From the IMG/VR virus record IMGVR_UViG_3300027573_000779, positions 144,934 to 208,933 of that record: a stretch of 64,000 bases of DNA. One strand, written 5' to 3'. This document shows, piece after piece, positions 7,073 to 57,046 of the stretch. A program made the translations under genes and the position numbers. Each line of letters opens with the position of its first letter. The stretch's first letter is position 1. Under the pieces are notes generated by a model that saw only the letters and a list, made by a program, of their open reading frames with translations, ran no database searches and was not told where the DNA came from.

Positions 7073-7100
7073 TTGACAAAACAAAAAAACCTGTTATCCT
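7073..7100 (+). promoter_or_regulatory. Sigma70-like promoter TTGACA-N16-TATCCT, ATG 6 nt downstream (leaderless type)
   Basis: Read directly from the sequence; ATG at 7107. Confidence 0.75.
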
Positions 7101-7106
7101 GTCTTT

Positions 7107-7460
7107 ATGAATAGACGCGGTTTTTTTACGGATTTAGCCTCAGGGTTGATTGTGTCGGCTGCACCGACAATTTTCGCGCCTCAACTCATTAAGCCAATCT
7201 GGAAGCCTTTCAGGTATATCCGCGCAGGGGAGTATATTCGGGTCAACAGACAAAATGTAATTGAAATGGGAGAAATGTTTCATGACCGATTAGCCAATAA
7301 ACTTATACGTAACCCTCTACCTAACTTGTTTGAAATAAATCAAGTGGCGGGTATGACGTGGTATAAACCACGCTTCTATAGTAACACTCCTGTTCTGACT
7401 GAATTAGACATTGTCAATTCTATTATATCTGAATATACAATGGTCGAACTACGTGATTAA
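7107..7460 (+). CDS. Hypothetical protein with twin-arginine (Tat-like) N-terminus
   Basis: MNRRGFFTDLASGLIVSAAP. Confidence 0.5.
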   Translation: MNRRGFFTDLASGLIVSAAPTIFAPQLIKPIWKPFRYIRAGEYIRVNRQNVIEMGEMFHDRLANKLIRNPLPNLFEINQVAGMTWYKPRFYSNTPVLTELDIVNSIISEYTMVELRD

Positions 7461-7797
7461 CATGACTAAAACTTACCGGCTAAAGTTGGACGACAAATAT
7501 TTTGACTATTGTTATAGGGGTCAGATGTTTTGTTGCTGTGATTTTATAGAACGAATTTTTGGGTCTTTGCCCCCTAAGATAACACTCGCCGCTTCAACAA
7601 CAAAAAAACAGGGCACTAGAATTTATGTCAAAAAACAGATATGCGAAGAGGAGACGTTTTGGTGGTGGCGGCACGACTGGGAAAGTAAAACAACAATATA
7701 TACTCTGTCTGGTTGTGTTGAGGAAAAGTTAACCAAGCTGTTTCCGAATGTTAAAGTAGGGGAGCAGATTGCTGTTTGGGTGAACGTTACAAAATAA
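7411..7797 (+). CDS. Hypothetical, CxxFV-P paralog family member 1
   Basis: Aligns by eye with 8042..8404, 29051..29383 and 59823..60239. Confidence 0.6.
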   Translation: MSILLYLNIQWSNYVINMTKTYRLKLDDKYFDYCYRGQMFCCCDFIERIFGSLPPKITLAASTTKKQGTRIYVKKQICEEETFWWWRHDWESKTTIYTLSGCVEEKLTKLFPNVKVGEQIAVWVNVTK

Positions 7798-8041
7798 TTT
7801 ATAATGAAAAGCCAACTCGTTTTTAACATCTTAAAAAGGCCATTTCCTAAATTAATGCAAATGAAAAGAAAGAATTATATTGTTCTTTTTGAAAAAGATA
7901 GTTGCGGCACTGTAATACATGCCCCTTTAACCCCTCCAGACTGCCAATCTTATAGTTTAGGATATTATGCCGATAATTGGGCTATGGAAGGCTTTGAAGA
8001 AATGCCGGAAGGAACTCAGGTTGTAATTTCAATATAAGGAG

Positions 8042-8404
8042 ATGAAAATTTTTGAACTTGCTCTTTCGGAGTCTAATTATTGGGTATACGCAGAAAGAAA
8101 TGGAGAAAAAAAGTTACTGCGAGCATTATGCGCAAATTTTGTCTGGCAATTAATTGAAGGAAAACCTGAAAAGATAAGGGTCACTGTCGATACCCAACCG
8201 ATTGAAGGGGCAAAAAAGCTTAAAGTTTGGCCAAACTTTTATGGTTGGTGTTGGTCAAATCCCGAGATGAATTTTACGATGCAAACTGATACTGCGCCAG
8301 TATATACATATGCCTCAGAGGTACTGAATAATATCTTTGGACAACATGTTGGAAAACATAGTGACAACAGCTTTGATATTTGGCTCTTGATTGAACCATC
8401 ATAA
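8042..8404 (+). CDS. Hypothetical, CxxFV-P paralog family member 2
   Basis: ALCANFVWQLIEGKPEKIRVTV motif shared with paralogs. Confidence 0.6.
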   Translation: MKIFELALSESNYWVYAERNGEKKLLRALCANFVWQLIEGKPEKIRVTVDTQPIEGAKKLKVWPNFYGWCWSNPEMNFTMQTDTAPVYTYASEVLNNIFGQHVGKHSDNSFDIWLLIEPS

Positions 8405-9385
8405 ATAATGACCCTAGAACAAAAAACTAGAAGTTTATTAAGGCGAGTGCTGCGGCTTGACTGTTTATCTTCTGAGATTGATTATGAAGTGCAACTTTAC
8501 AAGCTCCAAAAAGAAGTTAGAAAACATTTAAAAGAATTGCCAAAGTTACGAAAATGTTTAGGTTGTGGTTTTGTGCATAACGGCGACTGCGCGACTATAT
8601 GAAAAACATAAAACTTATAAACATTGTTCAGGCTCTAGATAATGAAGTCGGTATTACTGATAAAGACATGGTTGAAACTATTAAGTTTTTAACTAACGTC
8701 CTTGATTCCAAAGATAGTGTTAAAAAGGTCTGGAAGCATGTTAAAGATGCATATGAATATGAGTTTTGTAAACCATCATGAAACAAACCGCTTTAGATAT
8801 CTTACTTACAGACCCTGAATTTTTGGCCGCTTTCGGCGCTTTTATTACTGGTATGATAATATATGTTGCTGTTATGTGGTATAGAGATTGGAGAAGAGAA
8901 AGATAAAACTTGTGAAAATTCAAATCGAAAAATCAGAAGGCCATTATAGGGCAGATTGTCTGGATTTGCCCGGAACTCCTCCTGTAGGATTAGGGGAAAC
9001 GCCAGAAATGGCCGTCGCCTGCTTATTTTATAGGATGATGTTTGAAAGTCCCGGTGGCCCAAACAGTTATCAAAGGTATCGTTGGTTTGATTCAATTGAA
9101 AAAGGCGAGCCTATTATTGTTAATGACAAGATGTGGAGCTATCCCCCTTCTTATTTAAAAGATTTGAGATAAAATTATGAGTAAATTGTATCAAATTTAT
9201 GAACATGATTTGGCTATTCTTGAAAGCGAGCTACCAAGGTTGTTAGAAAGGCCAAACTGCGATGATGTAATTGTGCGCAAAAGGTGGGAAGCCATAAAAA
9301 AGATTATTTGTGACATAAGATGGGATTATGGTCCACCGTTAGAGAGTTTTATTATAGAGGAATAATAATTGGTTTGTCCTCATGT

Positions 9386-12266: not shown

Positions 12267-13139
12267 TCATGCTGCAACCGCCTCAACATCAAGCTCTTCT
12301 GTAGGCTCTTCTGCCTTTGGATTAAGTTTTTCCATGACCCATTCAAACCTTTTTTGCGCTTGTCCACTAGCGCCAACAATCAGTTTGCAGTCATCACGCA
12401 ATTGACTAATCCAGTTATTAAGATAGGCTCCGCTATTTTTGATTGTCTTACTAATGTCTATTCCGCAGTAGCTAGCAAAAAAGTTTGCACCTATTTCCGC
12501 AGTAAGTTCCTCTTTGCTATAAGATTCGTTCCCAAAATTACAGTCAAGAGTGACGCCTACTTCCTTACTAAGCCAGTGAGTTAATTCATGGAACAATGTG
12601 CAGTAATACTCTTCTACGCTGCCAAATTTCTCCTTTAAGGGCATGTATACAGTATGCTCTGAGGGTCTGTAGCAAGCCCTATCGCCACTATGGATGACAT
12701 TAACGCCCGTAGCCAGTACTAGCTTTTCAGCCTCTTCTATTGGCATAAAGTCAAGTCTGTTTTGCGCTGGCAGCTTGACCTTTACGTTCTCAGTATCTTC
12801 CAAGGCAAACACTGTATAATACCTTAAAAGAGGGATTGTCTTTTCCTCTTTGTTACCCGTAGGGCCGACTTTTTGCTCTTTAAGCATTTTCCAGAATACT
12901 ACAGGAATTCCCTTAGCTCCCTTTTTAATACTTCCGCCCGCTGCCCTTGCTTGATTGAAAGTCAAGAACCATTCTCCCTTGTCAGCTATAGCGCACATAA
13001 GAACATTAACTCCCCTATACGCCTTTTTGCTAATACAGTTACCATACCTAAAGCTACTCCAAGGTTTGTGCCATGGAACACTCTTATTCTCTTCCATCGC
13101 CTTAACTATTCTGTCAGTGATAATTTCATATGTATTCAT
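12267..13139 (-). CDS. ardC: ArdC-like antirestriction / ssDNA-binding protein with zincin domain (start moved to MNTYE)
   Basis: PWHKPW, YRGVN, TFNQ, KKGAKG, YYTVF, YYCTLFHELTHW, YSKEELTAEIGA motifs. Confidence 0.9.
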   Translation of the reverse strand: MNTYEIITDRIVKAMEENKSVPWHKPWSSFRYGNCISKKAYRGVNVLMCAIADKGEWFLTFNQARAAGGSIKKGAKGIPVVFWKMLKEQKVGPTGNKEEKTIPLLRYYTVFALEDTENVKVKLPAQNRLDFMPIEEAEKLVLATGVNVIHSGDRACYRPSEHTVYMPLKEKFGSVEEYYCTLFHELTHWLSKEVGVTLDCNFGNESYSKEELTAEIGANFFASYCGIDISKTIKNSGAYLNNWISQLRDDCKLIVGASGQAQKRFEWVMEKLNPKAEEPTEELDVEAVAA

Positions 13140-13145
13140 AGGCTC

Positions 13146-13173
13146 AATATACATAATCTTTTTTGCGCCGCAA
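13146..13173 (-). promoter_or_regulatory. Leaderless-type promoter TTGCGG-N16-TATATT-N6-ATG
   Basis: Places ATG at 13139. Confidence 0.7.
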
Positions 13174-13228: not shown

Positions 13229-13457
13229 ATGGTGGGAGGGGGGAAGGAAACTTAGTAGGTTTTTAAACTCCTATTGTTTTCTCTTTTGCTTCTTTTACCG
13301 CTTTTGCATAATTTCTAAGACAAGCGATTTTGCAAAAAGTTTTTCCTTTTAGATGTTCAAACCATCTTGTCTTGTTTTGAGCTTTAACTAAAGCGTTTGG
13401 ATTTCCACACCAATCACATTCATTCATCACCCCATAATACAAAACCTTTTTGCGTTG

Positions 13458-14006
13458 TCAACTCTTTAGCTTTAAATAAATTGTATCTCCTTGCAAAGTA
13501 ACGCTTTGCATGTATTCTGGTAGGATAATAAACTCCCTAAACCTACCTATAGGTAGTTCACTTCGCAAAGCTCTTTTAGCAATTGTCAAAGGTCTACTAT
13601 TTACAATCGGGCGTTCGCCCTCTTCTATGACTGTTTTCCTATGCTGTAAACCTGTTACGTTAATTGTTCTGTTACTGATACAGAATTTTAGGCCGGGAAC
13701 GATATCAACGTAAGAATCAGGTTTTCTATAGTCAGGATGAAAACGACCTAAAGAATGACTTTTTAAGCTTTCCTCAAAACTCTCTTTAAGTTGTTGAGCT
13801 GCAAGTATTAAGATAGGATGGTTTAGTGCTGGCCTGATTGCGTCAAGAGCTTCTAAAGACTTCCGAAGTTGATTGTCGTAAGATGCACCATAAATTACAG
13901 TATGGCGAGCTAGTTCGCCAGCTTGTTTGCATCTGTATAGAAATGAGACAAACTGAGCTTTACTGGCAAGCTCCTTTAGGGTGTCGATGACTAATTTTTC
14001 GTTCAT
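13458..14006 (-). CDS. Hypothetical phage protein
   Basis: 182-aa ORF with its own promoter-like upstream region. Confidence 0.6.
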   Translation of the reverse strand: MNEKLVIDTLKELASKAQFVSFLYRCKQAGELARHTVIYGASYDNQLRKSLEALDAIRPALNHPILILAAQQLKESFEESLKSHSLGRFHPDYRKPDSYVDIVPGLKFCISNRTINVTGLQHRKTVIEEGERPIVNSRPLTIAKRALRSELPIGRFREFIILPEYMQSVTLQGDTIYLKLKS

Positions 14007-14338
14007 CTCCCAATAATAAAGAGTTTTTTTATCTTGTCAAGCTTTTCTCAAAATGCCTTTGCAATAAGCCACAACGTTTTGAATCAAAAAAGACTATTAA
14101 AGCTATAAAGCTCTCAATTAGCCATCGGGGATAGCGCAATTTTAGCCAAAGAAATTTCCAAATCGGCGCTAATAAGCTTTTCTTATTTTTAATATACTTC
14201 GTTGCTGCCCAACGATTTAAAACCGCAATAGGCTTGTATCCCATGGGGTAAAGCCAGATAAAACGTAATACTTCTGTCATTATTCCCCATTGTATCAGAA
14301 ATTTTTACGTTGGCAAGAGGGGGGACCTCCCCAATGGG

Positions 14339-14497: not shown

Positions 14498-14519
14498 ATG
14501 CTCAAGCGCCGCAGGGCTT
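14498..14519 (-). repeat. Junction element AAGCCCTGCGGCGCTTGAGCAT (consensus copy)
   Basis: Identical to copies at 33295-33316, 33521-33542 and 39861-39882. Confidence 0.9.
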
Positions 14520-16520
14520 TATGAATTATAATCCCTTTCACAAGACCGACTACAAAACACCTTTTCTTGCATCTCGTTCTTGTTTTTATCGTCCCTGTTA
14601 ATACCATACCTGAATTTAGCAGGTTGGCCGCACCACGCGCACTCACCCTCTGCTTTTTGGCGCACAACGTTAAAACGTCCAAAAGGGTCTCTTGAGATTG
14701 ATACTGTATTCATGTTCTCAATAATAGAGAGTCTTTTTATGTTTGCAAGACTAAATTTGAGAGTGCCCACATTTTGGACATTTGAGCACGTCAACCATTG
14801 TAACCTTAGAAGGAAGGAAACTAAGCGTATCTCCGTCTCTTGCGGGTTTACCATCAAGGCGACCTGTACCATTGACAAGAGCTTTTACCCTTTTTAAGGG
14901 GAACTTTACATCGCCAGCAAATTTTTGTGCCTTGTTTGGTCTTCATGCTTTATGTTACTTTCCGTCAAATTATACAATATTTATGTGTCAACCGCAAATA
15001 TCTTGTGGTCTATGAGTTACCTGTTCGCCATTTTTCGCCACAAGAACCACTGTTACCTGATATTCTTTGCGAGCTTTAAGCTGTTGCGCCGCTTTCTTTT
15101 GCGCCGAATAGGAGGTTTCAGCTTCGACTTCAATTTCCTTGCCACGATAAAAAGCTTTATATATATTCATAAAAGAGATTATACATAGTCTTTTTTATGC
15201 TACAAGCCAAACTTTATACTGCTAGGGCTGTATTCGTCTCAATAGGTGGCATACACTGATTAATCACTTCTAGCAATTCTGACAATTTATTGTCATCTAT
15301 GCCAAGAAATTCCCCTATAATACTTCTCATATCCTTATCTGTTAAAGCCACTTGTGCAATTTTAAGGGTTTCGAGTGCCTCTTCTCTTGTAAATTCTTTT
15401 GTGTTCATTGATTATAAAAATAGCGTATAAGGAGAAGAGCCGCAAGTAAAATTAATATGCTCATTTATTTATTCCTGTTCCTCTTCTGTGTCTTTTTCTT
15501 CCAGTTCATCTTCCAGACGTTCAACAACCTCTGCGAGTGTATCACAACTAGACACAACCCACTCTTGACTTGTCGAAATTGCTGGTTCGCAATGCCCTAA
15601 AGTCCTATACTTGAATTGCTGGTACTCCTGTTGAGACATTGACCGCCGACAAATTTCCTTAAACTCGTTTAATCCTTCCTCTAGTTCAGTGGCGAGTTCT
15701 GCGAGACGTTCCCAATTAGCTTTTGTAATTTTATTCATTGAGTTTCACTGATTTAATTTTAAATTTTTCGTCTGTTCCCTCGTACTTTTTGACTAGTTCT
15801 GCTAGTTTGGTTTGCGCTGGCGCTAGGTCAAGCCATACACCAAACTCCATACAATGGAGCCAGTCACCATCGCCCACGTTATCCACGTTATCATTATAAC
15901 TAGGACACCACTGCACTATGTAATAAACGCTCTTCATGGTTAAAAGATACAATATCTTTTTTAACTGTCAATAGCGGTTATTGTCAATCTTTCTAATCGC
16001 ATTAATCGCTGGTATAATACTTTCTGCACCAAGTTCATATGTAATTGATTCTTCAACAACACACAAAAGAGTCTTGGCTAGTCTAACAGGATGTTCCCCG
16101 TTAGAGGAAAACTTTAGTCTTTCGTCATATGTCAACTTTTTATAAAGCTGTAAAGCTCTCTCTTTTAAAATTTCGCCTGCTTTAACAGACATTTCTTTAA
16201 TAGCAGATTCAAATTCAGCACTACTACGGGCAACTTCTTTAGTATTCATAAAGTATAAAAGATACAATATCTTTTTTAAAAGTCAACACTCAAGCGCCGT
16301 TTACAGTTAATCTGCTAATTTGACTTCGCGCCATACCGTCAAGGCATTCAAAAGCTTTTCCTTGTCTTTCTATTCTAGTTTTTGCGCCATTGATGATATT
16401 AGCTACCTTTTGCGCATTTTCGCGCCCGCCGCAATCCTGAATCAGGTTAAAGTTCCCGTTAGAGAACACCCACTTGCGAAAGCTCCGATTGAAGTTAAAT
16501 AGTGTTTTATTCATATTCTG

Positions 16521-16548
16521 AGAATATAGAATCTTTTTAAAACGTCAA
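16521..16548 (-). promoter_or_regulatory. Leaderless-type promoter TTGACG-N16-TATTCT-N6-ATG
   Basis: ATG at 16514. Confidence 0.75.
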
Positions 16549-17255: not shown

Positions 17256-17261
17256 AGTTTA

Positions 17262-17289
17262 ATTATACAATATCTTTTTTGCGCTGCAA
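17262..17289 (-). promoter_or_regulatory. Leaderless-type promoter TTGCAG-N16-TATAAT-N6-ATG
   Basis: ATG at 17255. Confidence 0.8.
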
Positions 17290-17930: not shown

Positions 17931-17956
17931 AAAAAAGCCCCCAAAAGGGGGGCTTT
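17931..17956 (-). terminator. Intrinsic terminator
   Basis: AAAGCCCCC/GGGGGCTTT stem with A-run. Confidence 0.65.
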
Positions 17957-22503: not shown

Positions 22504-22509
22504 ATTTGG

Positions 22510-47466: not shown

Positions 47467-47778
47467 TCAGTCCGCCACTTTCCGAACCATTTCTTGGAAG
47501 TAATCGTACTCCCGAACCCTGCCCACTTCCCACAACCCCTTATCAAGAGTGATAGGGGCGTGCTCTTCATGGACAACGGTCGCTGACTTTTCCAGAGAGA
47601 GAAGAATTCTCTCGCCTTCCTGAATCAGTTCAAACTCGTCCTCTGCTTCGAGAATGTGACTGTGACCAGACTCGCCATGTGCTACCACATAATGTCTTAG
47701 TTTTGTGACCTTGGCTTCCTTGGAAGGAGGTTGGGTCACCCTTTTGAACAGAACGTCGCCTTGTTGTGCGGTTTTCAT
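47467..47778 (-). CDS. Conserved His-rich partner of DUF6745
   Basis: QQGDV...AHGESGHSH...HEEH..I.L..G......REY. Confidence 0.75.
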   Translation of the reverse strand: MKTAQQGDVLFKRVTQPPSKEAKVTKLRHYVVAHGESGHSHILEAEDEFELIQEGERILLSLEKSATVVHEEHAPITLDKGLWEVGRVREYDYFQEMVRKVAD

Positions 47779-47821
47779 ATATTGTTTCTCTATTATATTA
47801 CAGCTTTTTAAAAAGTCAAGC

Positions 47822-48841
47822 CTAGGTTAATTTCTCTGCATTCGTAAACCAATTACTGTTGCGCCATTTAAGGGCCGCTTCAATCGTGCTACATTCAGGG
47901 GCTACGCCCTCCAAATGCCACACTCCAACTGAAGGATTAAGCATCTTAAGATATTTGGCGTTTGGAACAACGTCTGATAAATTGACACTAAGAAGCTCAT
48001 AGTTGCCAAGCTTTTCCAAAACCTTATGACTTAAGCTTACCAACATGCGCTCAATTCCAATTTTGCGAATTAGCTCTCTCCGCTTGTCCACATTGGTTTC
48101 TTTTAAAACTTCTTTGGGATTGAGTTTTTCCGCAGGAGTTAAAACCTGTTTTGGGGACATAGCTATTCCATTCAGGAAATAAAGCTTCCAACCATCAGAA
48201 TATTCAACCGCTGGAGCTTCATCTTTGTGAAGTCGCCCTTCGCTATTGCGCCAAATTTGGGTTGGCTTGCTGGTAACAATGAGGCAGCTATCAGTAGGGT
48301 AAAAAAGGCCCAAATCCGCGCAAGCTTCAAGCTTATCGTAGTTTTTCATAACTTCAGCGTCAAATTTAACTCCAATCATCTTGTAGGCGCTTACCCACCC
48401 AAAATAATTGGAATAAAAATGACCATCAAAGTAGGGCCAGACAAAAAGCTTAATGGTATTTTTGAGCTTTGTAATAAGGTCCTCTTCTGAAAGAGGATTT
48501 TTGGACTTGAAAGTTATTTGGCTATTAATCTGTTCCCAAGTTGTTTCAAACAAGCCCCGCAAATTCTTATTTATCTCACTAAAACTGGGGCGCTTTGGAT
48601 TCCAGTTTTCATAGCCCCCCTCACTCAAAAGGCAAAAGGCAATCCAACCGCCAAAAGGACTAGAAACATGAATGACGGGGTTTTTCTTGCCCAAAATTTG
48701 CTCGCTCCATTCGCCTCCTAGCCTTTGTGCTTCGCTGGTTGGAACTTGGCGACAGTCAAGCGCCCTGTCCCGCCAGTAATTCTTGATTTCCTCAAGTTTT
48801 TTGACTTGTTCGTCAGTTAGTTTTTCGATTTTATCTGCCAT
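47822..48841 (-). CDS. DUF6745-like protein
   Basis: KIEKLT.EQ, P......GRLH....PAVEYSDGW..Y..NG, N...RR....IG.E, LKM.NPS.....E.V...C.T...AL.W. Confidence 0.8.
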   Translation of the reverse strand: MADKIEKLTDEQVKKLEEIKNYWRDRALDCRQVPTSEAQRLGGEWSEQILGKKNPVIHVSSPFGGWIAFCLLSEGGYENWNPKRPSFSEINKNLRGLFETTWEQINSQITFKSKNPLSEEDLITKLKNTIKLFVWPYFDGHFYSNYFGWVSAYKMIGVKFDAEVMKNYDKLEACADLGLFYPTDSCLIVTSKPTQIWRNSEGRLHKDEAPAVEYSDGWKLYFLNGIAMSPKQVLTPAEKLNPKEVLKETNVDKRRELIRKIGIERMLVSLSHKVLEKLGNYELLSVNLSDVVPNAKYLKMLNPSVGVWHLEGVAPECSTIEAALKWRNSNWFTNAEKLT

Positions 48842-48897
48842 ATTTTTTTAAGTTGTTCTCTAAATCTGTAGCTATGGTAACAAAACTTTTTGAAATG

Positions 48898-49499
48898 TCA
48901 ACAGTTTAGAAATTTTGAGCTTTCGTCCCAAATTTGTTCTGAAATTTGTTCCCAAGCGTCTTCAAGTCGAAAAAACTTCTCGTTCGCTATAATTTGGCTC
49001 CGAATTTGGAGATGAACTTGGTTATAAATTTCTCCTCCAATCAAACTCCGAAGTTCTATAATTTTAGTCGTCATCTGGTTCAAACGGTTCATATATTCAA
49101 GCGCCGAGAGACTATGTTGTTTTTGTGTTCATAACCGCAACTTGTTCCAAAATTGGGTTCCAAATTTGGTCCCTAAATTGGTCCCGCATTGGAGTCCAAA
49201 CTTGGTACCTAAATTGGTTCTTAATTTGGTCCCCAACTTGGTTATTAATTTTATCCCAAATTTGGTCCCCCATAATCTGAATTTTAGTATTAGCCATAAC
49301 TCTGGTTTCTTTACTAAGGGCTTAGTGTCTCCCTAAAAACTTGGTTCCAAAGCTGGTCCTCAATTTGGTGCTTGATTCGGTTTTCTATTGTGTCAATAAC
49401 TTTCCCAACTTGGTCCCAAACTTGGCTCCTAGCTTGATTCCAAAAAGCATGAGATATAATCATAGTTCTGGTTTCTTTACTAAAGTCATGCGCCGCCAT
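48898..49499 (-). CDS. Three tandem QVWD-family mini-proteins upstream of DUF6745
   Basis: GDQIWDKINNQVGDQ; WNQARSQVWDQVG; WEQISEQIWDE. Confidence 0.75.
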
Positions 49500-50467
49500 A
49501 TTAATTTGCGCAGTTTTCCTTCAGGACCATGGGGTTGATGGACGAGGCTTTTTCTTCGCCAATGCATCCGTGGAGAAGCGTGATGTCCCCCTAGACTTGG
49601 TGACTCGTGTTCAATCTTATAACCATATCCAACAATATTAGGAGACCAAAGCGCTTCTTTTTTAATTTCTCCCGTCTTAGCCTTTTTCTCGGGTCTTTCT
49701 AAAGATGCTGGCTTAATAAGTTTTGGACTGGTCCCCCAAACCATTAAAGTAAGGATTGTGGCTTGAACGGCCTTAATTAGGATTTTCTGTTCTTCTTCAG
49801 ATGAAGGAGATGGGGATTTGTCGTTTTTAATTTTTTCATATAGTTTTGGTTGGTAGAGTTCATACATTAATTCTTGAACCTTTGTCACATCTTCCCACCT
49901 ACCTTCTTTTTCAGTTAGACCAACAGTACTAATTGGCATATTAGTTGGATACCACGCGGCATAATTAACAAAACGCCCGCTATCCATTAAAAAAGGTAAA
50001 TGAAAACACAAAGTTCCCACATTTACTTCTTGTCCCAAAACAAAATCTCCTTTATCTACAAGTGAAACGCCAATAAAGGGAAATCGCCAGCCTAAATAAG
50101 ATTCAACAAATTGTGTTGGAAACACTAATATAAAATGTTTTAAAGGCAGATAAACTTCGCTAAAACTAAAATCTTGAGGAGGGACAGTCGCCACACATTC
50201 CAACAGAAATTCATGGTCAATAAAATAAGTCGGAACCTGAGTGTCTATCAAATTGTTGGTAACCGTTTTAATTACTTGGTCTGTGTCTCCTTGCAAAGAA
50301 TAAAACCATGAATTAATAATGCCTAAAACAAGACTGTAATATTTTGGGTCATAATACCCATTAGGGCAGACAATTCGTTTCGGGTAAAACAAACTAATTC
50401 TTTCTTGCGCCTTTTCGCAAAGTTCTTTGAAATGGTCCCACTCGTTTTCAAAAATTTCAATCTTCAT
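49460..50467 (-). CDS. Hypothetical phage protein with C-terminal SPRxHWRR motif
   Basis: GGHHASPRMHWRRKSLVHQPHGP...RKLIW. Confidence 0.6.
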   Translation of the reverse strand: MKIEIFENEWDHFKELCEKAQERISLFYPKRIVCPNGYYDPKYYSLVLGIINSWFYSLQGDTDQVIKTVTNNLIDTQVPTYFIDHEFLLECVATVPPQDFSFSEVYLPLKHFILVFPTQFVESYLGWRFPFIGVSLVDKGDFVLGQEVNVGTLCFHLPFLMDSGRFVNYAAWYPTNMPISTVGLTEKEGRWEDVTKVQELMYELYQPKLYEKIKNDKSPSPSSEEEQKILIKAVQATILTLMVWGTSPKLIKPASLERPEKKAKTGEIKKEALWSPNIVGYGYKIEHESPSLGGHHASPRMHWRRKSLVHQPHGPEGKLRKLIWRRMTLVKKPEL

Positions 50468-50504
50468 CCCAACATTTTAAATAAAATTTTTAAAAATGCA
50501 AGTA

Positions 50505-51143
50505 TTATTTTTGCTTCAAAATGAAGCTTAACCACTCTACCCTTGGGACAGTTGAAATTTCGCTTGCCGCAGTCCTAGGTAAAGGTTTTTTAGGCTCATA
50601 AAGAAGTCTGTGTCTGAAATTTTCGATAGGCATATTCCCTCTTTCACTGTTTAAGTCCCTATGGGCCAAAACAATATTGGTCCACTCGTCCTTTCCACCA
50701 TGGGATTTGGGTTTAACGTGTTCTAAAGAAGCTTCAGCTAAAGTTAAGATTTTACCACTATAAGCACATTTCTTGCCATAATGACGATAAGCGTTACGTT
50801 TGTTTAGTTTTAACTCCCTGAGGGCTAGACCGTTATAGTTTTTTGCCCTCATCACAATCGGCGCTCTAATAGTTCTTTTAGAGGTATGAATTGGAATGTC
50901 CCATGAACGAACCGGTAAATTCATCCAAGCTTCTAAATTAACTGGTTCCCAATAGCTAACTTTATCGAAATTCGGTCTGCCATCATCATCTAATTCAAAT
51001 TCAATATCAATCCCTTGAGAGGCCATATTGCCATCTTCTGAAGTAGAAAAAAGATTGGTAAGAGCCTTCTTTATTGTCGCGGTGCCTACAACAATATAAA
51101 GACTATTAAGAACAAGAACAAGCTGTTCATTTAAAAGGTTCAC
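50505..51143 (-). CDS. HNH endonuclease
   Basis: VLVLN, CAYSG, SLEHVKPKSHGG...WTNIV.....N..RGN. Confidence 0.88.
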   Translation of the reverse strand: MNLLNEQLVLVLNSLYIVVGTATIKKALTNLFSTSEDGNMASQGIDIEFELDDDGRPNFDKVSYWEPVNLEAWMNLPVRSWDIPIHTSKRTIRAPIVMRAKNYNGLALRELKLNKRNAYRHYGKKCAYSGKILTLAEASLEHVKPKSHGGKDEWTNIVLAHRDLNSERGNMPIENFRHRLLYEPKKPLPRTAASEISTVPRVEWLSFILKQK

Positions 51144-51805
51144 TAAAAAGAATTGTGTCGTTAACTGACCAAAGTAAAGGACTTATATCATTACCGAAAC
51201 CAACTTTTCTTACAATATCACCCCAATCAGAAACTAAAAATGACTGATAAATCTGCGTATCAATTTTTCTTCTTACTACTTTTATCTGGCTATACGGATG
51301 ATTCCAAACTCGGTCGCGAAATATGTTTCTATTCATCGTAAATTTATTCAAAAAATTCATTCAAATAAATTGCATCGTTAAGCCTCCAACTTAAAAGAGT
51401 TAAATTGTGCCCAAGATAGGTTCTTATTTCAATGTCGTGCCAAACAGAAGTTGATAATGACTTTAAAATTTGTGTATGAATTTCTTCTCTGATTCTTTGT
51501 ATCTGTATATTCGGATGAACCAAAGTTTGGTTTAAAACCGTGTCTATGTTGTTCATTGTCTATTCAAAAACTTTACTAAATACAATTCCCTCCTCAATAG
51601 CCCAAACTAGACGATGATAAGAAAAAGGAATGGTCTTTTTGATTTCTAAACATAAATTTGAGTGAATCTCTGAGTTTTGTTGCACAAGAATTTTGTTTGT
51701 TGCCAGTTTTTCTATCTGGCTATTCGGATGAGTCCAAACTTGGTTCCAAATTATGTTTGTTTCCATTATCGTAATCAACTTTATCTTTGATAACCTTGGT
51801 GCCAA
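51127..51805 (-). CDS. Tandem triplet of HPxxQI mini-proteins (diverged QVW-family branch)
   Basis: RVWNHPYSQI / QTLVHPNIQI / QVWTHPNSQI with matching C-termini. Confidence 0.7.
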
Positions 51806-51974
51806 AAAGCGCCCCTAAGAAAACACTTAAATTTGTAGGAATTTCAGCTAATTCTCCATTTTTAAGTGAAACAATACCCCAAACAACAAAAAAAAGAAGA
51901 AAAGCAACCGTATTTGCTGTGTTAATAACACAAAACGCTCCGTCTTGCTGTTCACATAACTCCGCTATTCTCAC
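51720..51974 (-). CDS. Small two-TM membrane protein (holin-like candidate)
   Basis: Two hydrophobic segments and a charged C-tail; GTGTAA-N8-GTG upstream. Confidence 0.45.
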   Translation of the reverse strand: MRIAELCEQQDGAFCVINTANTVAFLLFFVVWGIVSLKNGELAEIPTNLSVFLGALFGTKVIKDKVDYDNGNKHNLEPSLDSSE

Positions 51975-52145
51975 ATATTACATTACACAAATTTTCAGGT
52001 TCTGGCCTTTTAAACTTGCTACAACTTGACCTATGTCTTTCTGGCTGGCTTAAATGCCAGTAATCGCCGCACTCGTTACACCTAGCCGCCCAATTAGCGC
52101 CGTCTACGATTGCACTTGGGAGTAGTGTATATTCAAGAATTGTGT

Positions 52146-52328
52146 TCATCGTTCTTCTAAAGCAACCACCCTATCAATTATAAAACTGCGCACTCCATGT
52201 CCAAAAGCGTAAGTAGTAAATTTTTCATCATTTTGTTCAATTGGATTACTAATACGATAACTGTGAATCTGACCGTTGGTTTTGCGATATTTAAGATAAA
52301 ACGTTTTTGCTTCAGGTAAGTTTCTCAT
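52146..52328 (-). CDS. Small WYL-like domain protein
   Basis: Y.K..G....Y.I...RSF..DRV. Confidence 0.45.
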   Translation of the reverse strand: MRNLPEAKTFYLKYRKTNGQIHSYRISNPIEQNDEKFTTYAFGHGVRSFIIDRVVALEER

Positions 52329-52655
52329 TTTTTCATGTTACCTGAATCTTATTTCTTGTCAATATATGATTTTGCGCTTTGAGTAAATTCCTGTATTTTT
52401 GGCAATTCGATAAAAAACTCCTTAAAATTAGTCTTAAAAAAGTCAAACGCCTGCCTTTCATTGATAGGCCCTTGGGTTTTAACATTAGCTTTAAAAAGGT
52501 TGCTGTCTGGAGTCCTAATTGTAATTTCGTAAATCACGCTTCCCCAATTTGTGCCTAAAATTCTGAGGGAAGATTCAAAGCCTTCGATTTGCATTCGCAA
52601 GTTTTAACCAAGTAATAAACCAGTCACTATTATACCAATTCTCCATCCATAATAT

Positions 52656-53078
52656 TTACACCCAAACACTTTCTACGGGAACGGTACTATCAGAAATCCC
52701 TTCCTGTTTTAAATATTCTCTAATATTCTTCGAGCCTTCCGGGTTGTGACTGTGAACGTAAATTTCTGGAAGTGGCACTTTTGTCTTTCTACAATAACGA
52801 ACCAACCATCTGGCGCAATCAAACCCCGTTAACTCAGTAATCTTGGTATAGTCTATAGGTTTCTTGTGTATTTGCGCAATTTCCCATTCCATAATTGCAG
52901 ACCAATCTAAATCATGGTCTAAACTTACTACTTTAGGAATGCCATTTCTAAGTATAAAATCAATAAAATCCTTACCATTTCGCAAAACGACCCAAGGAAC
53001 AGTTTTTAAATGTTCGGGATATGCAATCCAATAAACCGCCTCAATACCAGAACGTTCATCGTCTAAAAACAAATACAT
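52656..53078 (-). CDS. Cyclic-phosphate-processing receiver-domain protein
   Basis: LFLDDER, VSLDHDL, TGFDCARWL, VHSHNPEG..NI. Confidence 0.88.
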   Translation of the reverse strand: MYLFLDDERSGIEAVYWIAYPEHLKTVPWVVLRNGKDFIDFILRNGIPKVVSLDHDLDWSAIMEWEIAQIHKKPIDYTKITELTGFDCARWLVRYCRKTKVPLPEIYVHSHNPEGSKNIREYLKQEGISDSTVPVESVWV

Positions 53079-53696
53079 ATTTCAATCAAAAACTCTACTC
53101 GTTTGTTTGTAAATCTCCTCAGAAAGTTGATATTTTATATTCCATAAACGGGAAACAGAAGGTCTCTGCATTTCAAAAGATATTACGCTAAAATTAAGTG
53201 AATCTGATATACTATTGATTGCATCCCTAACCTGTTTCGCTATTCGGTCCCGCAAAGCTATTTGCTGGCTCGTGTCTGTTGCCATACCTCATATTGATTC
53301 CGCATTTCATATTGAACTGCTTCTTGGATAGCTGTTTCTGCCAGCCCAGTATCATTTGTTATGCCCAATGGATAATAACGAAAACCAAGCCAATCCAATG
53401 CCTGTTTTGGAATAGTAATCGTAATACTAACTGGGTCTAGAATTTGTGTTTGTATCATCTATTTCGCAATATAAAGGTGAATTAAAAAATGGATACCATT
53501 CGGCCCAAACCGGCGTTCCTTCCTGTTCTTTTGGGTCATAAATGTAAGCGCCTAAATTAGTGCAACCCACAGCTATGCCATCAAACAGTTTAAGTTTTCG
53601 GCCAGAGTCAACTTTATAAACTCTGGCCTTTCTGCAAACCTCTGCGTTTATATACATACCACAGTATCTTACACTATGGTATGTTTGTTTTCAAGT

Positions 53697-54707
53697 TTAG
53701 TTCAGCACAATCAAAGTAGTGCCGGGAACTAAATTCCTATTAAGACTCTTAGATTGCACAAAAATGTTAAAAGAAGTATGTTTTACTGGGTCAACCTTAA
53801 CTTCATAATCTGGCAGCTTCAAAAAGTCTCTAGCACTGTCGCCAGTATAAACTTTCCCGTTCTTTTTGTCTTCAACACAAATTTGTTTTGTCGCCTGTAT
53901 TGTTTCAGGCTTAGTCAGCATGTAATAAGCACTTCCGATTCTATATGGTTTTTTTGTCCAACCTTCAACAAATTCCTTAATTGCTTTCTTTTGGTGAACA
54001 GAAAGAACCTGATATTCCTTGGGATTAAGTTCAATTAGGTGTTTTTTGACCGCTTTACTGTTAAGATTGGTAGTGTCCACAGTAAACAGCTTCTTCATGC
54101 TTCTAGTTCCAGCGCTACGAGCCGTCATAAAACTTTGGGTGCTCACAGTCATTATATCACCCATTTCTTTAACTCCATCTTTTGAAGCCTCCCAAGTTTG
54201 GATGTTGTCTTTTGGAAAACCAAATCTCAACAGTTCTTTTATTCCGTTTTGATTGGGAACAAAAGCTGCGAAAGTGTAATTCTCCTCCAGTTTTTTAATT
54301 TCCTCAACTAGATAAGCCCCACTTCCTCTACTGTTGTTTTCAAAACCGTCAGTAACACAATAAACAAGGAAAGCATGGTCGCCATAAAGCGTAGCTGTTT
54401 TCCTTAAATCATTGATTGCTCTCAAATTTGCATCGATTAAAGCTGTGTTACCGTATGGTTTGTAATGGCCCTTTATTGAGGGAACCCGCATCACGTCCAT
54501 ATCATATAAAAGACAATTTATGCTAAAATTGTCTGAAAACAAATAAATTGATAGTCTGGTCTCCTGATTCATGTCAACGGATTGTTTGGCAAAGGTTTTA
54601 ATTTGCCCGTCAACGACATTAATAACAGTGTCAGTAAGTCCAGCGCTTTCAATTGAAGAGCTTGCATCAACAACAAGCGCAATGTGGTTAACAAGATTTT
54701 GTATCAT
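53697..54707 (-). CDS. vWA-domain protein
   Basis: VVDASSSI (MIDAS), GNTALIDA, VTDGFENNS. Confidence 0.85.
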   Translation of the reverse strand: MIQNLVNHIALVVDASSSIESAGLTDTVINVVDGQIKTFAKQSVDMNQETRLSIYLFSDNFSINCLLYDMDVMRVPSIKGHYKPYGNTALIDANLRAINDLRKTATLYGDHAFLVYCVTDGFENNSRGSGAYLVEEIKKLEENYTFAAFVPNQNGIKELLRFGFPKDNIQTWEASKDGVKEMGDIMTVSTQSFMTARSAGTRSMKKLFTVDTTNLNSKAVKKHLIELNPKEYQVLSVHQKKAIKEFVEGWTKKPYRIGSAYYMLTKPETIQATKQICVEDKKNGKVYTGDSARDFLKLPDYEVKVDPVKHTSFNIFVQSKSLNRNLVPGTTLIVLN

Positions 54708-55206
54708 TTTCCCATTGTATTAAAACTTTTTAAAAAAACAAGCAAAAAAATTTAGCCAAAATAGCCGTTTTTGCAGATGAATTCATACATTTTTTCATCA
54801 GCGCCGCACTCCAGTTCAAAACAAAAAAAGAAGGTCCTCGCAAGCCTTTTGTGATAGGCATCAATCCAAGTCAGATTTGCCTTTTCCCAAGCTTTCCCTC
54901 GAAAATCAAACTCTGGATGCTTTTGAACGGTTTCTCGTGAAACATGAATATTCACTTAAATTCTGTCCACATTCAAATAAATTGCGATTGATGTTTGTTT
55001 TAGGACATCGCTTAAACTGTCAGACGCAAACTGCTCTCTTAGTTCGGGCGGAATAAAACCTATTTCACTTTCTATAGGCCAAATTGTTCTCCCAACTTTA
55101 GTAAGAATTTCTTGCGATATAGTTATATGTAATTTATTAGCAATTGGGAGCCGAATGTTTTCGCGTATTAAATTATAAACCTGTTGATTGAGTTCAGACA
55201 TTAAAT

Positions 55207-55461
55207 TCATTTAGCAATCTTTCTATAATTTTGCTGCCAAATAGCTTTTGTTATATAAGAGGAGGCTTTTCTTACTTGTCCTTCTTCCATTTCTGGAAAG
55301 CAAGCATGAAGAAGTTCATGAATAAGGGTATTTAAGTAATTTTTAGACAACTGGCGAGGGTCAATTTCAATAAGTTTGTTATCGGGCCAAAACTGACCCC
55401 AAGCTCTTTCGCGTCCAAGCTTTCTCTCTACTATAGGGACTCTTTTTCTGCGCCGCTTCAC
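55207..55461 (-). CDS. Minimal HExxH metallopeptidase-like protein
   Basis: TLIHELLHA...E..V. Confidence 0.6.
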   Translation of the reverse strand: MKRRRKRVPIVERKLGRERAWGQFWPDNKLIEIDPRQLSKNYLNTLIHELLHACFPEMEEGQVRKASSYITKAIWQQNYRKIAK

Positions 55462-56017
55462 ACATAGTTTTACACCTATTTAGATACCTGTCAACTGTTT
55501 GTAACCTTACCGAATCTGAAGTAATTATACCAACCATTGGAAGGCCAGTAAACGAGCCGGTATTTAAACAAACTATACTATTTATCTTTTCTAACGTAGC
55601 CTGATGATTGTGTCCAACTATAACTACTTGATAATCATTATCTTGCGCAAATTTAACAGCGTTCCTCTTAAGTCCAACCTTAGAGAACCAAGAACAAAAT
55701 TGATGACCATGAATAACACACACATTAAAACCATTATTATTCCAGTGATAACTTGGTAATAAATAGTCTTTTAAATAATCTTCGACTCCAGAAAACGCCT
55801 CATGATTGCCAGAAATCAAAATAGCTTTTCCTTTTTGTGCTAAAAATTTTATCTTTTCTAAAAGAGATTTATCATAAGAGGTCATGCGCCCTTTATAATC
55901 TACAATATCTCCATTGACAATTAATTTATCAAAAGAGGAATTTAAAACGCCGCTTATTGCAGACCTGTCACACCATCGATTCCCAAGATGTAAATCAGAT
56001 ATTATTAGCGTTTTCAA
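55379..56017 (-). CDS. Calcineurin-like metallophosphoesterase
   Basis: SDLHLG, NGDIVD, GNHE, HGH, GHNH, NTGS. Confidence 0.88.
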   Translation of the reverse strand: MKTLIISDLHLGNRWCDRSAISGVLNSSFDKLIVNGDIVDYKGRMTSYDKSLLEKIKFLAQKGKAILISGNHEAFSGVEDYLKDYLLPSYHWNNNGFNVCVIHGHQFCSWFSKVGLKRNAVKFAQDNDYQVVIVGHNHQATLEKINSIVCLNTGSFTGLPMVGIITSDSVRLQTVDRYLNRCKTMCEAAQKKSPYSREKAWTRKSLGSVLAR

Positions 56018-56419
56018 ACTTCTTCCAAGTCTCTTCCATTAATAGCCAACTCATGTAGCACAATTTCTTTCATACCTTTTCAACTAATTTTCTTTCCTGT
56101 CTTTGAATTTTTCGCCGGTTCCTTAAAAGCGCTTTCTTCTCTTTCTTGTTTCTGGCCTTTTCCAGAAATTCGGCCTGCGCCTTCCTTCTAATAGCCATCC
56201 TGAACACATCGAAAACTGATATATGATATCTTTGTTGAGTATGCAAAGGTCTAAACTCTATCAAGTCACCCGATTTTAGGCTAACCACTAGAGGTTTATC
56301 TTTGTCTTTGCCAAAAGTGCCGTCCAAAACACCTTTTGTAACCAAAGAAACAACCTTTTCTTTGTGACTAACAATATTATTATCTTTATCCTTAATAGGA
56401 ACTAGATAGCCAAAACGCC

Positions 56420-56632
56420 TCATAAAATACTAGTCTCAATTTGGGCTTCAACTTGGGTCCGAATTTGGCTCAAAAGCCGGTTTCCAGAATACTGAGTTCC
56501 CCAAACTTCTCCTCGAACTTGTCCCTGAACTTGGTTGAAAACTTGACTCACAATCTCATTCTTAACCTTGCCAAGAATTCGCTCAAAAGTGCTGTCCCAA
56601 ATTTGGTTTGGAGATTTTAGGTCATCGGACAT
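56420..56632 (-). CDS. QVWD-family mini-protein
   Basis: NQIWD...SQVFNQVQGQVRGEVWG...SQIRTQVEAQI. Confidence 0.75.
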   Translation of the reverse strand: MSDDLKSPNQIWDSTFERILGKVKNEIVSQVFNQVQGQVRGEVWGTQYSGNRLLSQIRTQVEAQIETSIL

Positions 56633-56719
56633 TTTTAAAGATTTTAAACGAAATTTTTAAAAACACAATAAAAATTTTTGCTATTGACGTTTTAAAAAGA
56701 ATTGATACACTTTTAAAAT

Positions 56720-57046
56720 ATGAAACATTCAAACATTCCAGAGCCTATACCTGATTTGGGACTAAAGGTCCGTTGTCCAATTTGCGAACAGGAAAAAGGC
56801 AAATCAAAACGATTTAAAAACAGCCTAGGCTATGAATTTCATTTCCATAAAATGCACGAAGATGGATACAGCTTGACTCAGGCTCCTCCCGAAACAATGC
56901 ATGTGAAAACTGAAATTAAGATTTTTTCCTATTTCTGTCCTGTTTGCGCTTACCCTCAAGCAACAATTAAAAAGCAATCCAATTGTGAGAAGTGCGGGAC
57001 ACATCAAGTCGCGATTTTAAAAGGTCTACAGGAAAGTCTTCAATAG
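56720..57046 (+). CDS. Zn-finger protein on the opposite strand with its own promoter
   Basis: CPIC...H...H, CPVC...CEKC; TTGACG-N16-TACACT upstream; convergent hairpin at 57064-57094. Confidence 0.6.
   Translation: MKHSNIPEPIPDLGLKVRCPICEQEKGKSKRFKNSLGYEFHFHKMHEDGYSLTQAPPETMHVKTEIKIFSYFCPVCAYPQATIKKQSNCEKCGTHQVAILKGLQESLQ

What the first reader, a model, noticed from the sequence alone, without database searches (positions are those of the whole stretch)
7073..56720. Dozens of near-identical promoters with a 16-bp spacer place the ATG at +1: a leaderless early transcriptome
Seen: TTG(AC/C)nn-N16-TAnnnT-N6/7-ATG, usually with spacer TTTTAAAAAAGATATTG-like, before 7107, 10207, 13139, 16514, 17255, 17500, 19417, 22503, 35094, 44082, 46666, 50467, 54707 and many more. 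There is no room for a Shine-Dalgarno. Several track ORFs starting 'MY...' (15952, 16267, 23603, 27533, 29028) actually begin at the Met after the -10 box. Established: transcription starts about 6-8 nt after the -10 box, and the canonical sigma70 spacer is 17 bp. Inference: nearly every early gene is an autonomous leaderless unit, which would make single genes portable and might bypass shut-off of leadered host mRNAs.
Basis: partly seen in the sequence, partly recalled or inferred. Interest (0 to 1): 0.72.

Follow-up and report, generated by a model that had tools for sequence, protein, structure and literature searches.

The report
Phage early promoters abutting start codons
A 209-kb uncultivated groundwater phage carries about 50 host-type promoters, and 38 of them sit so close to a gene's ATG that the messenger should begin at the start codon itself; this is a large, evolutionarily conserved case of "leaderless" gene expression, a mode already known from a few phages and bacterial phyla.

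Summary
The window is the last 64 kb of a 208,933-bp IMG/VR phage record. A matrix covering only the -35 to -10 region finds 51 sites here, 48 of them on the minus strand. The consensus is TTGACa, a 16-nt spacer tTTtAAAAAGAtatTG, then TATaaT. At 38 sites an ATG opening a 50-701-aa ORF lies 6-9 nt after the -10 box, most often 6 nt. A reversed-sequence control gives 2 such sites against 37. No Shine-Dalgarno sequence fits.

Four other large phages share homologous early proteins at 36-53% identity. They show the same -10-to-ATG peak at 6 nt with unrelated spacer sequences. Orthologous proteins align from Met1.

The best reading is host sigma-70-type early promoters that start transcription at, or 1-3 nt before, the AUG. 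No transcript data could be found.

- Only about 28% of genes on that strand have such a promoter.
- Terminators are not enriched.
- The 16-bp spacer is specific to some phages; one relative uses 17.
- Selective escape from host shut-off is untested.

The host is unresolved. The kind is known (Thermus phage phiYS40, lambda cI, Deinococcus-Thermus and actinobacterial genes), so this is a new member. Two by-products were found: ORFs abutting tRNA 3' ends in a relative, and an unexplained 20-nt element before ATGs.

The parts
13137..13173 (-). promoter-to-ATG unit of the ArdC-like gene (290 aa), gap 6
   Evidence: PWM 24.6. The Pfam ArdC-N domain starts at this Met. The G001 orthologue has the same layout.
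13425..13461 (-). unit, gap 6, 54-aa ORF
   Evidence: TTGACA-16-TATTAT
14004..14040 (-). unit, gap 6, 182-aa ORF
   Evidence: 11 of 12 consensus matches. The orthologue in G001 is also leaderless-type.
15935..15971 (-). unit, gap 6, 68 aa; the longest-ORF 'MY' start at 15952 lies inside the -10 region
16247..16286 (-). unit, gap 9, 93 aa; motif-2-like GCGCTTGAG directly 5' of the -35 box
   Evidence: PWM 34.9
16512..16548 (-). unit, gap 6, 74 aa
   Evidence: PWM 31.2. The G001 orthologue is leaderless-type.
17253..17289 (-). unit, gap 6, 105 aa, -10 TATAAT
17498..17534 (-). unit, gap 6, 69 aa
19415..19452 (-). unit, gap 7, 255-aa GP88-family protein
   Evidence: PWM 32.4; Pfam GP88; orthologue 56% identical with the same layout
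22501..22537 (-). unit, gap 6, 71 aa; near-perfect consensus
   Evidence: PWM 36.4; 11 of 12 matches
23586..23622 (-). unit, gap 6, 124 aa
   Evidence: PWM 34.2
25560..25598 (-). unit, gap 8, 66 aa; best-scoring promoter, preceded by motif 2
   Evidence: PWM 37.6. This 36-nt repeat breaks the assembly graph in four DNA runs.
27516..27552 (-). unit, gap 6, 129 aa
   Evidence: PWM 32.0
29008..29047 (-). unit, gap 9, 142 aa
   Evidence: PWM 31.4
31116..31154 (-). unit, gap 8, 152-aa Macro-domain protein
   Evidence: PWM 32.3; Pfam Macro
35092..35128 (-). unit, gap 6, 98 aa
   Evidence: PWM 19.8. The G001 orthologue has a weaker version.
44080..44117 (-). unit, gap 7, 301 aa
   Evidence: The orthologue alignment is invariant from M1. 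The G001 copy has gap 6.
46664..46700 (-). unit, gap 6, 701-aa HATPase_c_3 protein
   Evidence: The G001 orthologue is 38% identical and keeps TAAAAT, 6 nt, then ATG.
50465..50501 (-). unit, gap 6, 335 aa
   Evidence: PWM 19.9
54705..54741 (-). unit, gap 6, 336-aa vWA-like protein
   Evidence: M1-L5 are invariant with G001. The gene is leaderless-type in G001 and G002, but SD-led in G004, G005 and Streptomyces phage Satis.
60195..60232 (-). unit, gap 7, 124 aa, preceded by motif 2
   Evidence: PWM 27.4
7073..7109 (+). plus-strand unit, gap 6, 117 aa
   Evidence: PWM 19.7
56684..56722 (+). plus-strand unit, gap 8, 108 aa, divergent from the minus-strand unit at 56632
   Evidence: PWM 26.4
14711..39861 (-). 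15 further units; ATG A at 14713, 15170, 20691, 21118, 21811, 23175, 23926, 24229, 25994, 28091, 29798, 30272, 33810, 34250, 39826
   Evidence: Full table in notebook entry 4.
   Evidence: the PWM score is negative
16846..48901 (-). same promoter type but with a leader; -35 at 16932 (56 nt), 25169 (76 nt), 31763 (17 nt, GGAG), 38483 (30 nt, DUF932 gene), 47819 (13 nt), 48901 (32 nt)
   Evidence: These show that the promoter does not require an abutting ATG.
14501..60249 (-). motif 2, consensus AAGCC-CTGC-GGCGCTTGAG. It lies 2-5 nt before an ATG at 14515, 16866, 19971, 22758, 23019, 25087, 27818, 33312, 33538, 38912, 39375. It lies 1-3 nt before a -35 box at 25615, 31780, 36289, 39878, 44134, 60249.
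   Evidence: function unexplained
63846..63922 (-). tRNA with anticodon CAT and initiator hallmarks (C1xA72, A11:U24)

Best explanation
The repeated motif is a family of strong sigma-70-type promoters read by the host RNA polymerase early in infection. The -10 hexamer sits 6 nt (less often 7-9 nt) before the ATG, so transcription should start on the A of the start codon, or 1-3 nt before it. The mRNA would then have no leader and no Shine-Dalgarno sequence. Such mRNAs are initiated by ribosomes that recognise a 5'-terminal AUG together with initiator tRNA (established for leaderless mRNAs in general; inferred here).

About 38 mutually unrelated accessory genes in the window are expressed this way. 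They include an ArdC-like protein, a Macro-domain protein, and vWA-like, GP88-like and HATPase-like proteins. The remaining genes on that strand follow in operons or have short leaders.

Shown: the motif, its spacing statistics, the absence of SD, the true start codons, and conservation across five phages. Inferred: the transcription start position, the early timing, and the mode of translation.
For: 1. Promoter anatomy. TTGACa, 16 nt, TAnnnT with an A/T tract next to the -35 box and TG before the -10 box. There are 55 minus-strand and 5 plus-strand hits against 1 in the control.

2. The ATG distance peaks at 6 nt although the ATG is not part of the model.

3. Published mapping in 49 bacteria puts the start 7 bp downstream of the -10 element. 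A Y-R-Y triplet centred there fixes the start in 93% of E. coli library variants (PMC12641261). Here the A of ATG is at position 7, with a pyrimidine before it in 28 of 29 gap-6 units in G001 and 14 of 20 in this phage.

4. No SD core occurs in 0 of 38 units. Structural genes show 22% against a 6% background.

5. The start codons are real.

6. The same gap-6 peak appears in G001 (46 strand-specific pattern hits against 0 control), G002, G003 and G006, with different spacer sequence and length. Eight orthologous genes keep the layout at 38-56% protein identity.

7. The proteins are not paralogues, so the promoter similarity is not a by-product of gene duplication.

8. A -10 box adjacent to the ORF has been validated experimentally as the signature of leaderless genes in Deinococcus (PMC12340547).
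Against: - No transcript 5' ends are available: no RNA run was listed and the host is unknown.
- With gaps of 8-9 nt (11 units) a 1-3-nt leader is more likely than none.
- Terminators are scarce. Each ATG is therefore also internal to read-through transcripts, and the share of protein made from the leaderless form is unknown.
- Thirteen promoters of the same type have no abutting ORF, and six of these have 13-76-nt leaders.
- The coding 5' ends of the units show no consistent special composition or lack of structure: p=0.02 in this phage, p=0.87 in G001.
Confidence: 0.72

Rival explanations
1. The promoters are real, but the proteins are made mainly from long read-through transcripts. There, the transcribed promoter sequence (U/A-rich, unstructured) would serve as an SD-less leader for internal initiation. 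The leaderless transcript would be a minor by-product.
For: Intrinsic terminators are not enriched. SD use is low across the whole phage, 10-22%, so SD-independent internal initiation must occur for many genes. Some promoters of the same type have long leaders.
Against: This does not explain why the ATG sits exactly 6 nt after the -10 box in five phages whose spacer sequences differ. It also does not explain why a pyrimidine precedes the ATG in 28 of 29 G001 units. An A/U-rich leader would tolerate variable spacing.
Confidence: 0.15
2. The near-identity of the units reflects their role as recombination cassettes that shuffle single genes, as with the promoter/stem-loop 'PeSL' motifs of T4-type phages. 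The abutting ATG would simply be the cassette boundary.
For: The units head unrelated small accessory genes. A 36-nt composite of motif 2 plus promoter recurs at least 3 times exactly enough to break assemblies. The PeSL precedent is in PMC2839356 and PMC4122927.
Against: This is compatible with, rather than opposed to, leaderless expression. No close relative was available to show actual shuffling: four runs hold the same strain with no variants. Relatives with quite different spacer sequences keep the same spacing.
Confidence: 0.3
3. The motif is not a promoter but an RNA-level or protein-binding repeat, or the true starts lie downstream behind SD sites.
For: None was found beyond the absence of direct transcription data.
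Against: Conservation is concentrated exactly on the bases that define -35 and -10 elements (TTGAC; T, A and final T of the hexamer) at a fixed 16-17 nt spacing. ORFs open at the ATG. Orthologues align from M1. No SD core occurs.
Confidence: 0.03

Closest known systems
Leaderless transcripts of Thermus thermophilus phage phiYS40 (Sevostyanova et al. 2007, known here only through citing papers PMC3594737 and PMC12340547)
   Same: A large phage (about 150 kb) in which many genes are transcribed without a 5' leader and translated by the host ribosome.
   Different: In phiYS40 the leaderless class is described as middle/late, and the host phylum uses leaderless mRNAs routinely. Here the class carries full -35/-10 host-type promoters and heads the accessory (presumed early) block. 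Structural genes have leaders. The host is unknown. The original paper could not be read.
-10 motif adjacent to ORFs in Deinococcus-Thermus (PMC12340547) and the leaderless genes of Actinobacteria
   Same: TANNNT a few bp upstream of the start codon; no RBS; the spacing requirement has been validated experimentally as transcription at the start codon.
   Different: Those are cellular genomes, often without a strong -35 box. Here it is a phage block with near-consensus -35 boxes, a conserved spacer and 16-nt spacing.
Lambda cI mRNA from PRM (classic leaderless phage mRNA; own knowledge, cited in PMC12340547 as Shean & Gottesman 1992)
   Same: A sigma-70 promoter whose transcript starts with AUG.
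   Different: A single regulatory gene, against dozens of units.
PeSL promoter/stem-loop cassettes of T4-type phages (PMC2839356, PMC4122927)
   Same: Repeated early-promoter motifs flanking small variable genes in plastic regions; proposed to make single genes portable.
   Different: T4 early mRNAs have leaders and SD sites. Here stem-loop terminators are not enriched, and shuffling was not demonstrated.
tRNA punctuation of mitochondrial transcripts (own knowledge)
   Same: In relative G001, ORFs start 3-4 nt after tRNA 3' ends, so tRNA processing would leave an mRNA that almost begins with AUG.
   Different: This concerns a by-product seen in G001, not the window's promoters. Processing was not shown.

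Membership tests
sigma-70-type (housekeeping sigma) promoter | -35 hexamer resembling TTGACA | tested here: met
   TTGAC or TTGC in nearly all of 60 PWM hits; 10-12 of 12 consensus matches.
sigma-70-type (housekeeping sigma) promoter | -10 hexamer TAnnnT, 16-18 bp downstream of the -35 box | tested here: met
   Spacer of 16 nt in 30 of 37 units, the rest 15-18.
sigma-70-type (housekeeping sigma) promoter | purine start about 7 bp after the -10 box within a Y-R-Y triplet | tested here: met
   The A of ATG is at position 7 in 20 of 38 units. A pyrimidine precedes it in 14 of 20 (G000) and 28 of 29 (G001). The rule is from PMC12641261.
sigma-70-type (housekeeping sigma) promoter | binding and initiation by RNA polymerase holoenzyme | not testable with these tools
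   No RNA data.
leaderless mRNA gene | -10 box 5-9 nt before the start codon, so that the 5' UTR is 0 to a few nt | tested here: met
leaderless mRNA gene | AUG start codon that is the genuine N-terminus | tested here: met
leaderless mRNA gene | no Shine-Dalgarno sequence | tested here: met
   0 of 38 units.
leaderless mRNA gene | mapped transcript 5' end at the start codon and translation of that transcript | not testable with these tools
   None was listed.
PeSL-type mobile regulatory cassette | composite of early promoter and terminator stem-loop | tested here: inconclusive
   Terminator-like sites are not enriched (14 against 14.2). Six promoters are, however, immediately preceded by the weak-hairpin motif 2.
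PeSL-type mobile regulatory cassette | indel or replacement breakpoints between close relatives fall in the motifs | not tested
   Only identical strains or distant relatives were available.

The most novel reading that the evidence does not exclude
A clade of large environmental phages has organised its accessory genome around 5'-terminal AUG recognition, producing start-codon-first mRNAs in three ways. The first is host-type promoters that fire on the ATG. The second is tRNA genes whose 3' ends abut the next ORF (G001). The third is a 20-nt element that sits 2-5 nt before ATGs (this phage) and might be a processing or second-promoter signal. This phage adds its own initiator tRNA. If so, the phage could keep translating after disabling leader- or SD-dependent initiation of host messages.
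Probability: 0.15. Interest if true: 0.8.

Novelty: new member of a known kind. Interest (0 to 1): 0.55.

Why it matters
Leaderless expression in phages is documented for single genes and for one Thermus phage. This case has dozens of units with near-consensus promoters, conserved in at least five uncultivated phages of 137-251 kb (three of them incomplete records). For the same vWA-like gene, relatives use either the leaderless layout or a classical SD leader, which is a natural experiment on switching initiation modes.

There are practical consequences:
- Longest-ORF gene callers mis-start these genes. The 'MY' starts lie inside the -10 box.
- The units are compact, portable expression cassettes of about 35 bp.
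- The pattern is a cheap sequence signature for finding leaderless regimes in metagenomic viruses.

Tried and rejected
1. Near-identical DNA in cultured phages: none.

2. RNA evidence: no RNA run was listed. Laying four DNA runs showed the same strain without variants, so there was no microdiversity test.

3. N4-like hairpin promoters read by a virion RNA polymerase, as an explanation for motif 2. The 5,468-aa ORF is tape-measure-like, not a polymerase. No T7-type RNAP hit was found, but that search's controls were also silent, so it is uninformative. Motif 2 hairpins are weak and inconsistent, -2 to -13 kcal/mol.

4. Patescibacteria as host with a host-typical leaderless habit. The initiator-like tRNA is closest to Saccharibacteria (70 of 77) but nearly as close to Rhizobium (69 of 77). 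The promoter-ATG pattern looked enriched in a Saccharibacteria genome. However, 7 of 8 sampled hits there are a repeated promoter whose 'ATG' opens only 6-26 codons, and a distance-shifted control removes most of the signal in the other genomes. Lead withdrawn.

5. Actinobacterial host. The vWA-like protein's nearest cultured homologues are in Mycobacterium phages Phabba and Myrna (45-47%) and Streptomyces phages (35-36%). Those phages have no such pattern, and the Satis homologue is SD-led with GTG.

6. Special 5' coding features of leaderless genes: none consistent.

7. Motif 2 in other viral contigs: only single, apparently chance matches.

8. Homologues of the vWA-like protein in bacterial genomes by pattern scan: none.

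Full report
**Context**

The window is bases 144,934-208,933 of a 208,933-bp IMG/VR virus record rated 100% complete. GC content is 38%. The same sequence is held in groundwater and freshwater-sediment DNA runs.

From about 10.2 kb onward almost all genes are on the minus strand. That block continues across the record's end to genome position about 37 kb, roughly 90 kb in all, with about 184 ORFs of at least 50 aa. It holds mostly small genes of unknown function. Identified ones are an ArdC-like antirestriction/metallopeptidase protein, a DUF932 protein, a Macro-domain protein, a GP88-family protein, a vWA-like protein and a 701-aa GHKL-type ATPase.

The plus-strand block at 38-132 kb holds replication and tail genes: RNR, DnaB, a DnaE-type polymerase, a J-like tail fibre and a 5,468-aa tape-measure-like ORF. 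The phage is far from any cultured one.

**Checking the observation**

Every cited coordinate shows the pattern once the minus strand is read.

I built a weight matrix from the -35 box to the last T of the -10 box only and scanned both strands of the whole genome. It gave 60 sites at 14 bits or more: 55 on the minus strand, 5 on the plus strand, and 1 in the reversed-sequence control. The consensus is cTTGACa, tTTtAAAAAGAtatTG (16 nt), then TATaaT.

Although the ATG was not in the model, 39 of the 52 sites that are followed by an ORF of at least 30 aa have that ATG 6-9 nt after the hexamer. In the window this is 38 of 51 sites, with ORFs of 50-701 aa (table in notebook entry 4).

A second model used no spacer sequence (TTGnnn, 15-18 nt, TAnnnT, at least 9 of 12 consensus matches). 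It reproduces the peak: gap 6: 17, gap 7: 9, gap 8: 7, gap 9: 3, with 0-4 in every other bin up to 40. The total at gaps 5-9 is 37 against 2 in the control. The spacer is 16 nt in 30 of the 37. The tool's own consensus scan lists the same sites.

**Are the ATGs the real starts?**

- The longest-ORF starts 'MY' are a TTG-TAT inside the -10 region.
- For the ArdC-like gene, the Pfam N-domain begins at the Met of 13139, not at the upstream ATG.
- The vWA-like and the 301-aa proteins align with their orthologues in a second phage with invariant residues from M1.
- In all 8 reciprocal-best-hit pairs that are leaderless-type in both phages, the alignment begins at residue 1-6 in this phage and 1-12 in G001.

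**Where does transcription start?**

This could not be measured. Only DNA runs hold the sequence, and no RNA run was listed.

The inference rests on the general rule that the start lies 7 bp downstream of the -10 element. A pyrimidine-purine-pyrimidine triplet centred there fixes the start in 93% of variants, and in 79% when centred at position 8 (PMC12641261).

With a 6-nt gap the A of ATG is position 7, and ATG supplies the purine and the following pyrimidine. The preceding base is a pyrimidine in 14 of 20 gap-6 units here and in 28 of 29 in relative G001. For the 11 units with gaps of 8-9 nt, a leader of 1-3 nt is more likely than none.

**Shine-Dalgarno use**

None of the 38 units has a GGAG, GAGG or AGGA core in the 17 nt before the ATG. 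The other minus-strand genes show 13%, equal to background. The structural block shows 22% against a 6% background, typically AAGGA or GGAG 8-14 nt upstream. So the phage does use leaders and some SD sites for late genes, and the leaderless layout is specific to the accessory block.

**Comparative evidence**

The 701-aa protein finds one relative, G001 (IMGVR_UViG_3300044712_000786, 202,704 bp, with terminal repeats), at 38% identity. Its gene is preceded by TTGCAT, 16 nt, TAAAAT, 6 nt, then ATG. G001 has 31 exact matches to TTG-N7-AAAAA-N7-TAnnnT-N6-ATG on one strand, and none on the other strand or in the control.

Profiles of two orthologue pairs led to further viral contigs. Counts for the pattern TTGAC-N17/18-TAnnnT-N5-8-ATG were:

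| Genome | Matches | Control |
|---|---|---|
| G000 | 19 | 5 |
| G001 | 50 | 0 |
| G002 | 20 | 0 |
| G003 | 47 | 2 |
| G006 | 13 | 1 |
| G004 | (looser pattern) no excess | |
| G005 | (looser pattern) no excess | |

ORF-aware histograms on fetched parts of G002, G003 and G006 again peak at a gap of 6 nt (11, 18 and 5 sites respectively). Their spacer sequences are unrelated. The spacer is 17 nt in G002, 16 nt in G003 and mixed in G006.

The vWA-like gene is leaderless-type in G000, G001 and G002. It is preceded by a classical SD leader in G004, in two short contigs, in G005 and in Streptomyces phage Satis. The spacing is thus under selection in a group of phages, and the 16-bp spacer is a lineage habit rather than part of the mechanism.

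- Of 123 minus-strand ORFs of at least 50 aa in genome 155-209 kb, 35 (28%) have such a promoter. Another 36 overlap or follow the previous gene within 10 nt, and the rest have longer gaps. The density is highest at 13-31 kb.
- Terminator-like sites are at the shuffled expectation (14 against 14.2), so the units are not insulated.
- Thirteen promoters of the same type have no abutting ORF. Six of these have leaders of 13-76 nt.
- The 38 proteins are unrelated to one another. This fits independent acquisition or cassette spread, and T4 PeSL motifs are the known analogue. Shuffling itself could not be tested, because the four runs hold an identical strain.
- Nothing bears on selective translation after host shut-off.

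**Host**

The host is unresolved.

The window's tRNA(CAT) has initiator hallmarks (see below). Its anticodon arm matches exactly in Patescibacteria and Rhizobiales genomes, and full-length identity is 70 of 77 against 69 of 77. An apparent enrichment of the promoter-ATG pattern in a Saccharibacteria genome proved to be a repeated promoter not followed by ORFs, so I withdraw that lead.

The vWA-like protein's nearest cultured homologues are in Mycobacterium and Streptomyces phages. Those phages lack the pattern.

**By-products**

- **Motif 2.** A 20-nt element (AAGCC-CTGC-GGCGCTTGAG) occurs about 18 times on the early strand, directly after a stop codon. It lies either 2-5 nt before an ATG (11 copies) or 1-3 nt before a -35 box (6 copies). 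It also sits just before the ATG inside the two longest leaders. Its hairpin is weak, and it is absent from G001 and from other viral contigs except for chance matches. A processing site, a second promoter class or a coupling element are all possible, and none was tested.
- **tRNA-abutting ORFs in G001.** At least 7 of 21 tRNA genes, plus 2 tRNA-like elements, are followed after 3-4 nt (CCA-AUUU-AUG) by an ORF of 58-105 aa. tRNA processing would leave an mRNA with a near-terminal AUG.
- **Candidate late promoter.** GTGTAA lies 8-24 nt before 23 ORF starts, mostly structural genes, about 6-fold over expectation. The phage encodes a sigma-like protein at genome 142,461-143,153.

**Comparison with what is known**

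Leaderless mRNAs from promoters that abut the ORF are established for lambda cI, for Thermus phage phiYS40 and for about a third of Deinococcus genes. They are also common in Actinobacteria. This locus meets every sequence-level criterion of that kind. The transcript-level criteria could not be tested.

It differs from phiYS40 in three ways: the leaderless class belongs to the accessory (presumed early) block, the promoters have full -35 and -10 elements, and a conserved spacer is present. I file it as a new member of a known kind. It is notable for its scale and for its conservation across a group of large uncultivated phages.

Noticed in passing
window 14501-60249, minus strand (copies listed under parts): A conserved 20-nt element, AAGCC-CTGC-GGCGCTTGAG, sits directly after stop codons and either 2-5 nt before an ATG or 1-3 nt before a -35 box. 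It has about 18 copies, all on the early strand. The hairpin is weak and the function is unexplained.
   Followed up: partly
G001 (L018/L019), e.g. genome 132833-132913, 140633-140713, 144756-144836, 149504-149583: In the related phage, at least 7 tRNA genes and 2 tRNA-like elements are followed 3-4 nt after CCA by the ATG of a 58-105-aa ORF ('CAATTTATG' occurs 13 times). This suggests that tRNA processing yields near-leaderless mRNAs.
   Followed up: partly
window 63846-63922 (-): The only tRNA in the window has anticodon CAT with a C1xA72 mismatch and A11:U24, like bacterial initiator tRNA, but only 2 of the 3 G:C pairs in the anticodon stem. G001 has 17 tRNAs but no Met tRNA.
   Followed up: partly
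G000 genome-wide; in the window e.g. upstream of ORF starts 4761 (+), 57304 (-), 58695 (-): GTGTAA lies 8-24 nt before 23 ORF starts, mostly structural genes. It is a candidate late promoter element. Several copies lie only 8-10 nt from the ATG. A sigma-factor-like ORF lies at genome 142461-143153 (-).
   Followed up: partly
window 34028-44347 (-), e.g. ORF 37019-37243: A family of 10 or more tiny proteins (52-89 aa) is built almost entirely of (V/I)(W/R)DQ tetrapeptide repeats. Its DNA repeat GACCAAGTT is the most over-represented 9-mer in the genome, with 45 copies.
   Followed up: partly
G000 genome 115243-131649 (+) = L023: A single 5,468-aa ORF has a phage minor-tail (tape-measure-type) domain at its N-terminus and zinc-metallopeptidase motifs. 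This is extraordinarily long for a tape-measure protein.
   Followed up: no
window 10207 and 11483 (-): Two genes share TAGAGTAGGAT(T), 4-6 nt, then ATGAAT upstream, without the A-rich spacer. This may be a separate promoter subclass with -10 TAGGAT.
   Followed up: no
window 25582-25619: The 36-nt composite of motif 2 plus promoter is repeated exactly enough (also at 44136 and genome 24079) to end contigs in four independent assemblies.
   Followed up: yes
G011 (Saccharibacteria MAG), e.g. L101, L104: A highly repeated promoter-like element, TTGAC-N-TTGACAAAGTGTGcTATAAT-N4-GTATAATGGGGAG, is not followed by ORFs. There are more than 25 copies in 0.6 Mb, perhaps heading non-coding RNAs.
   Followed up: partly
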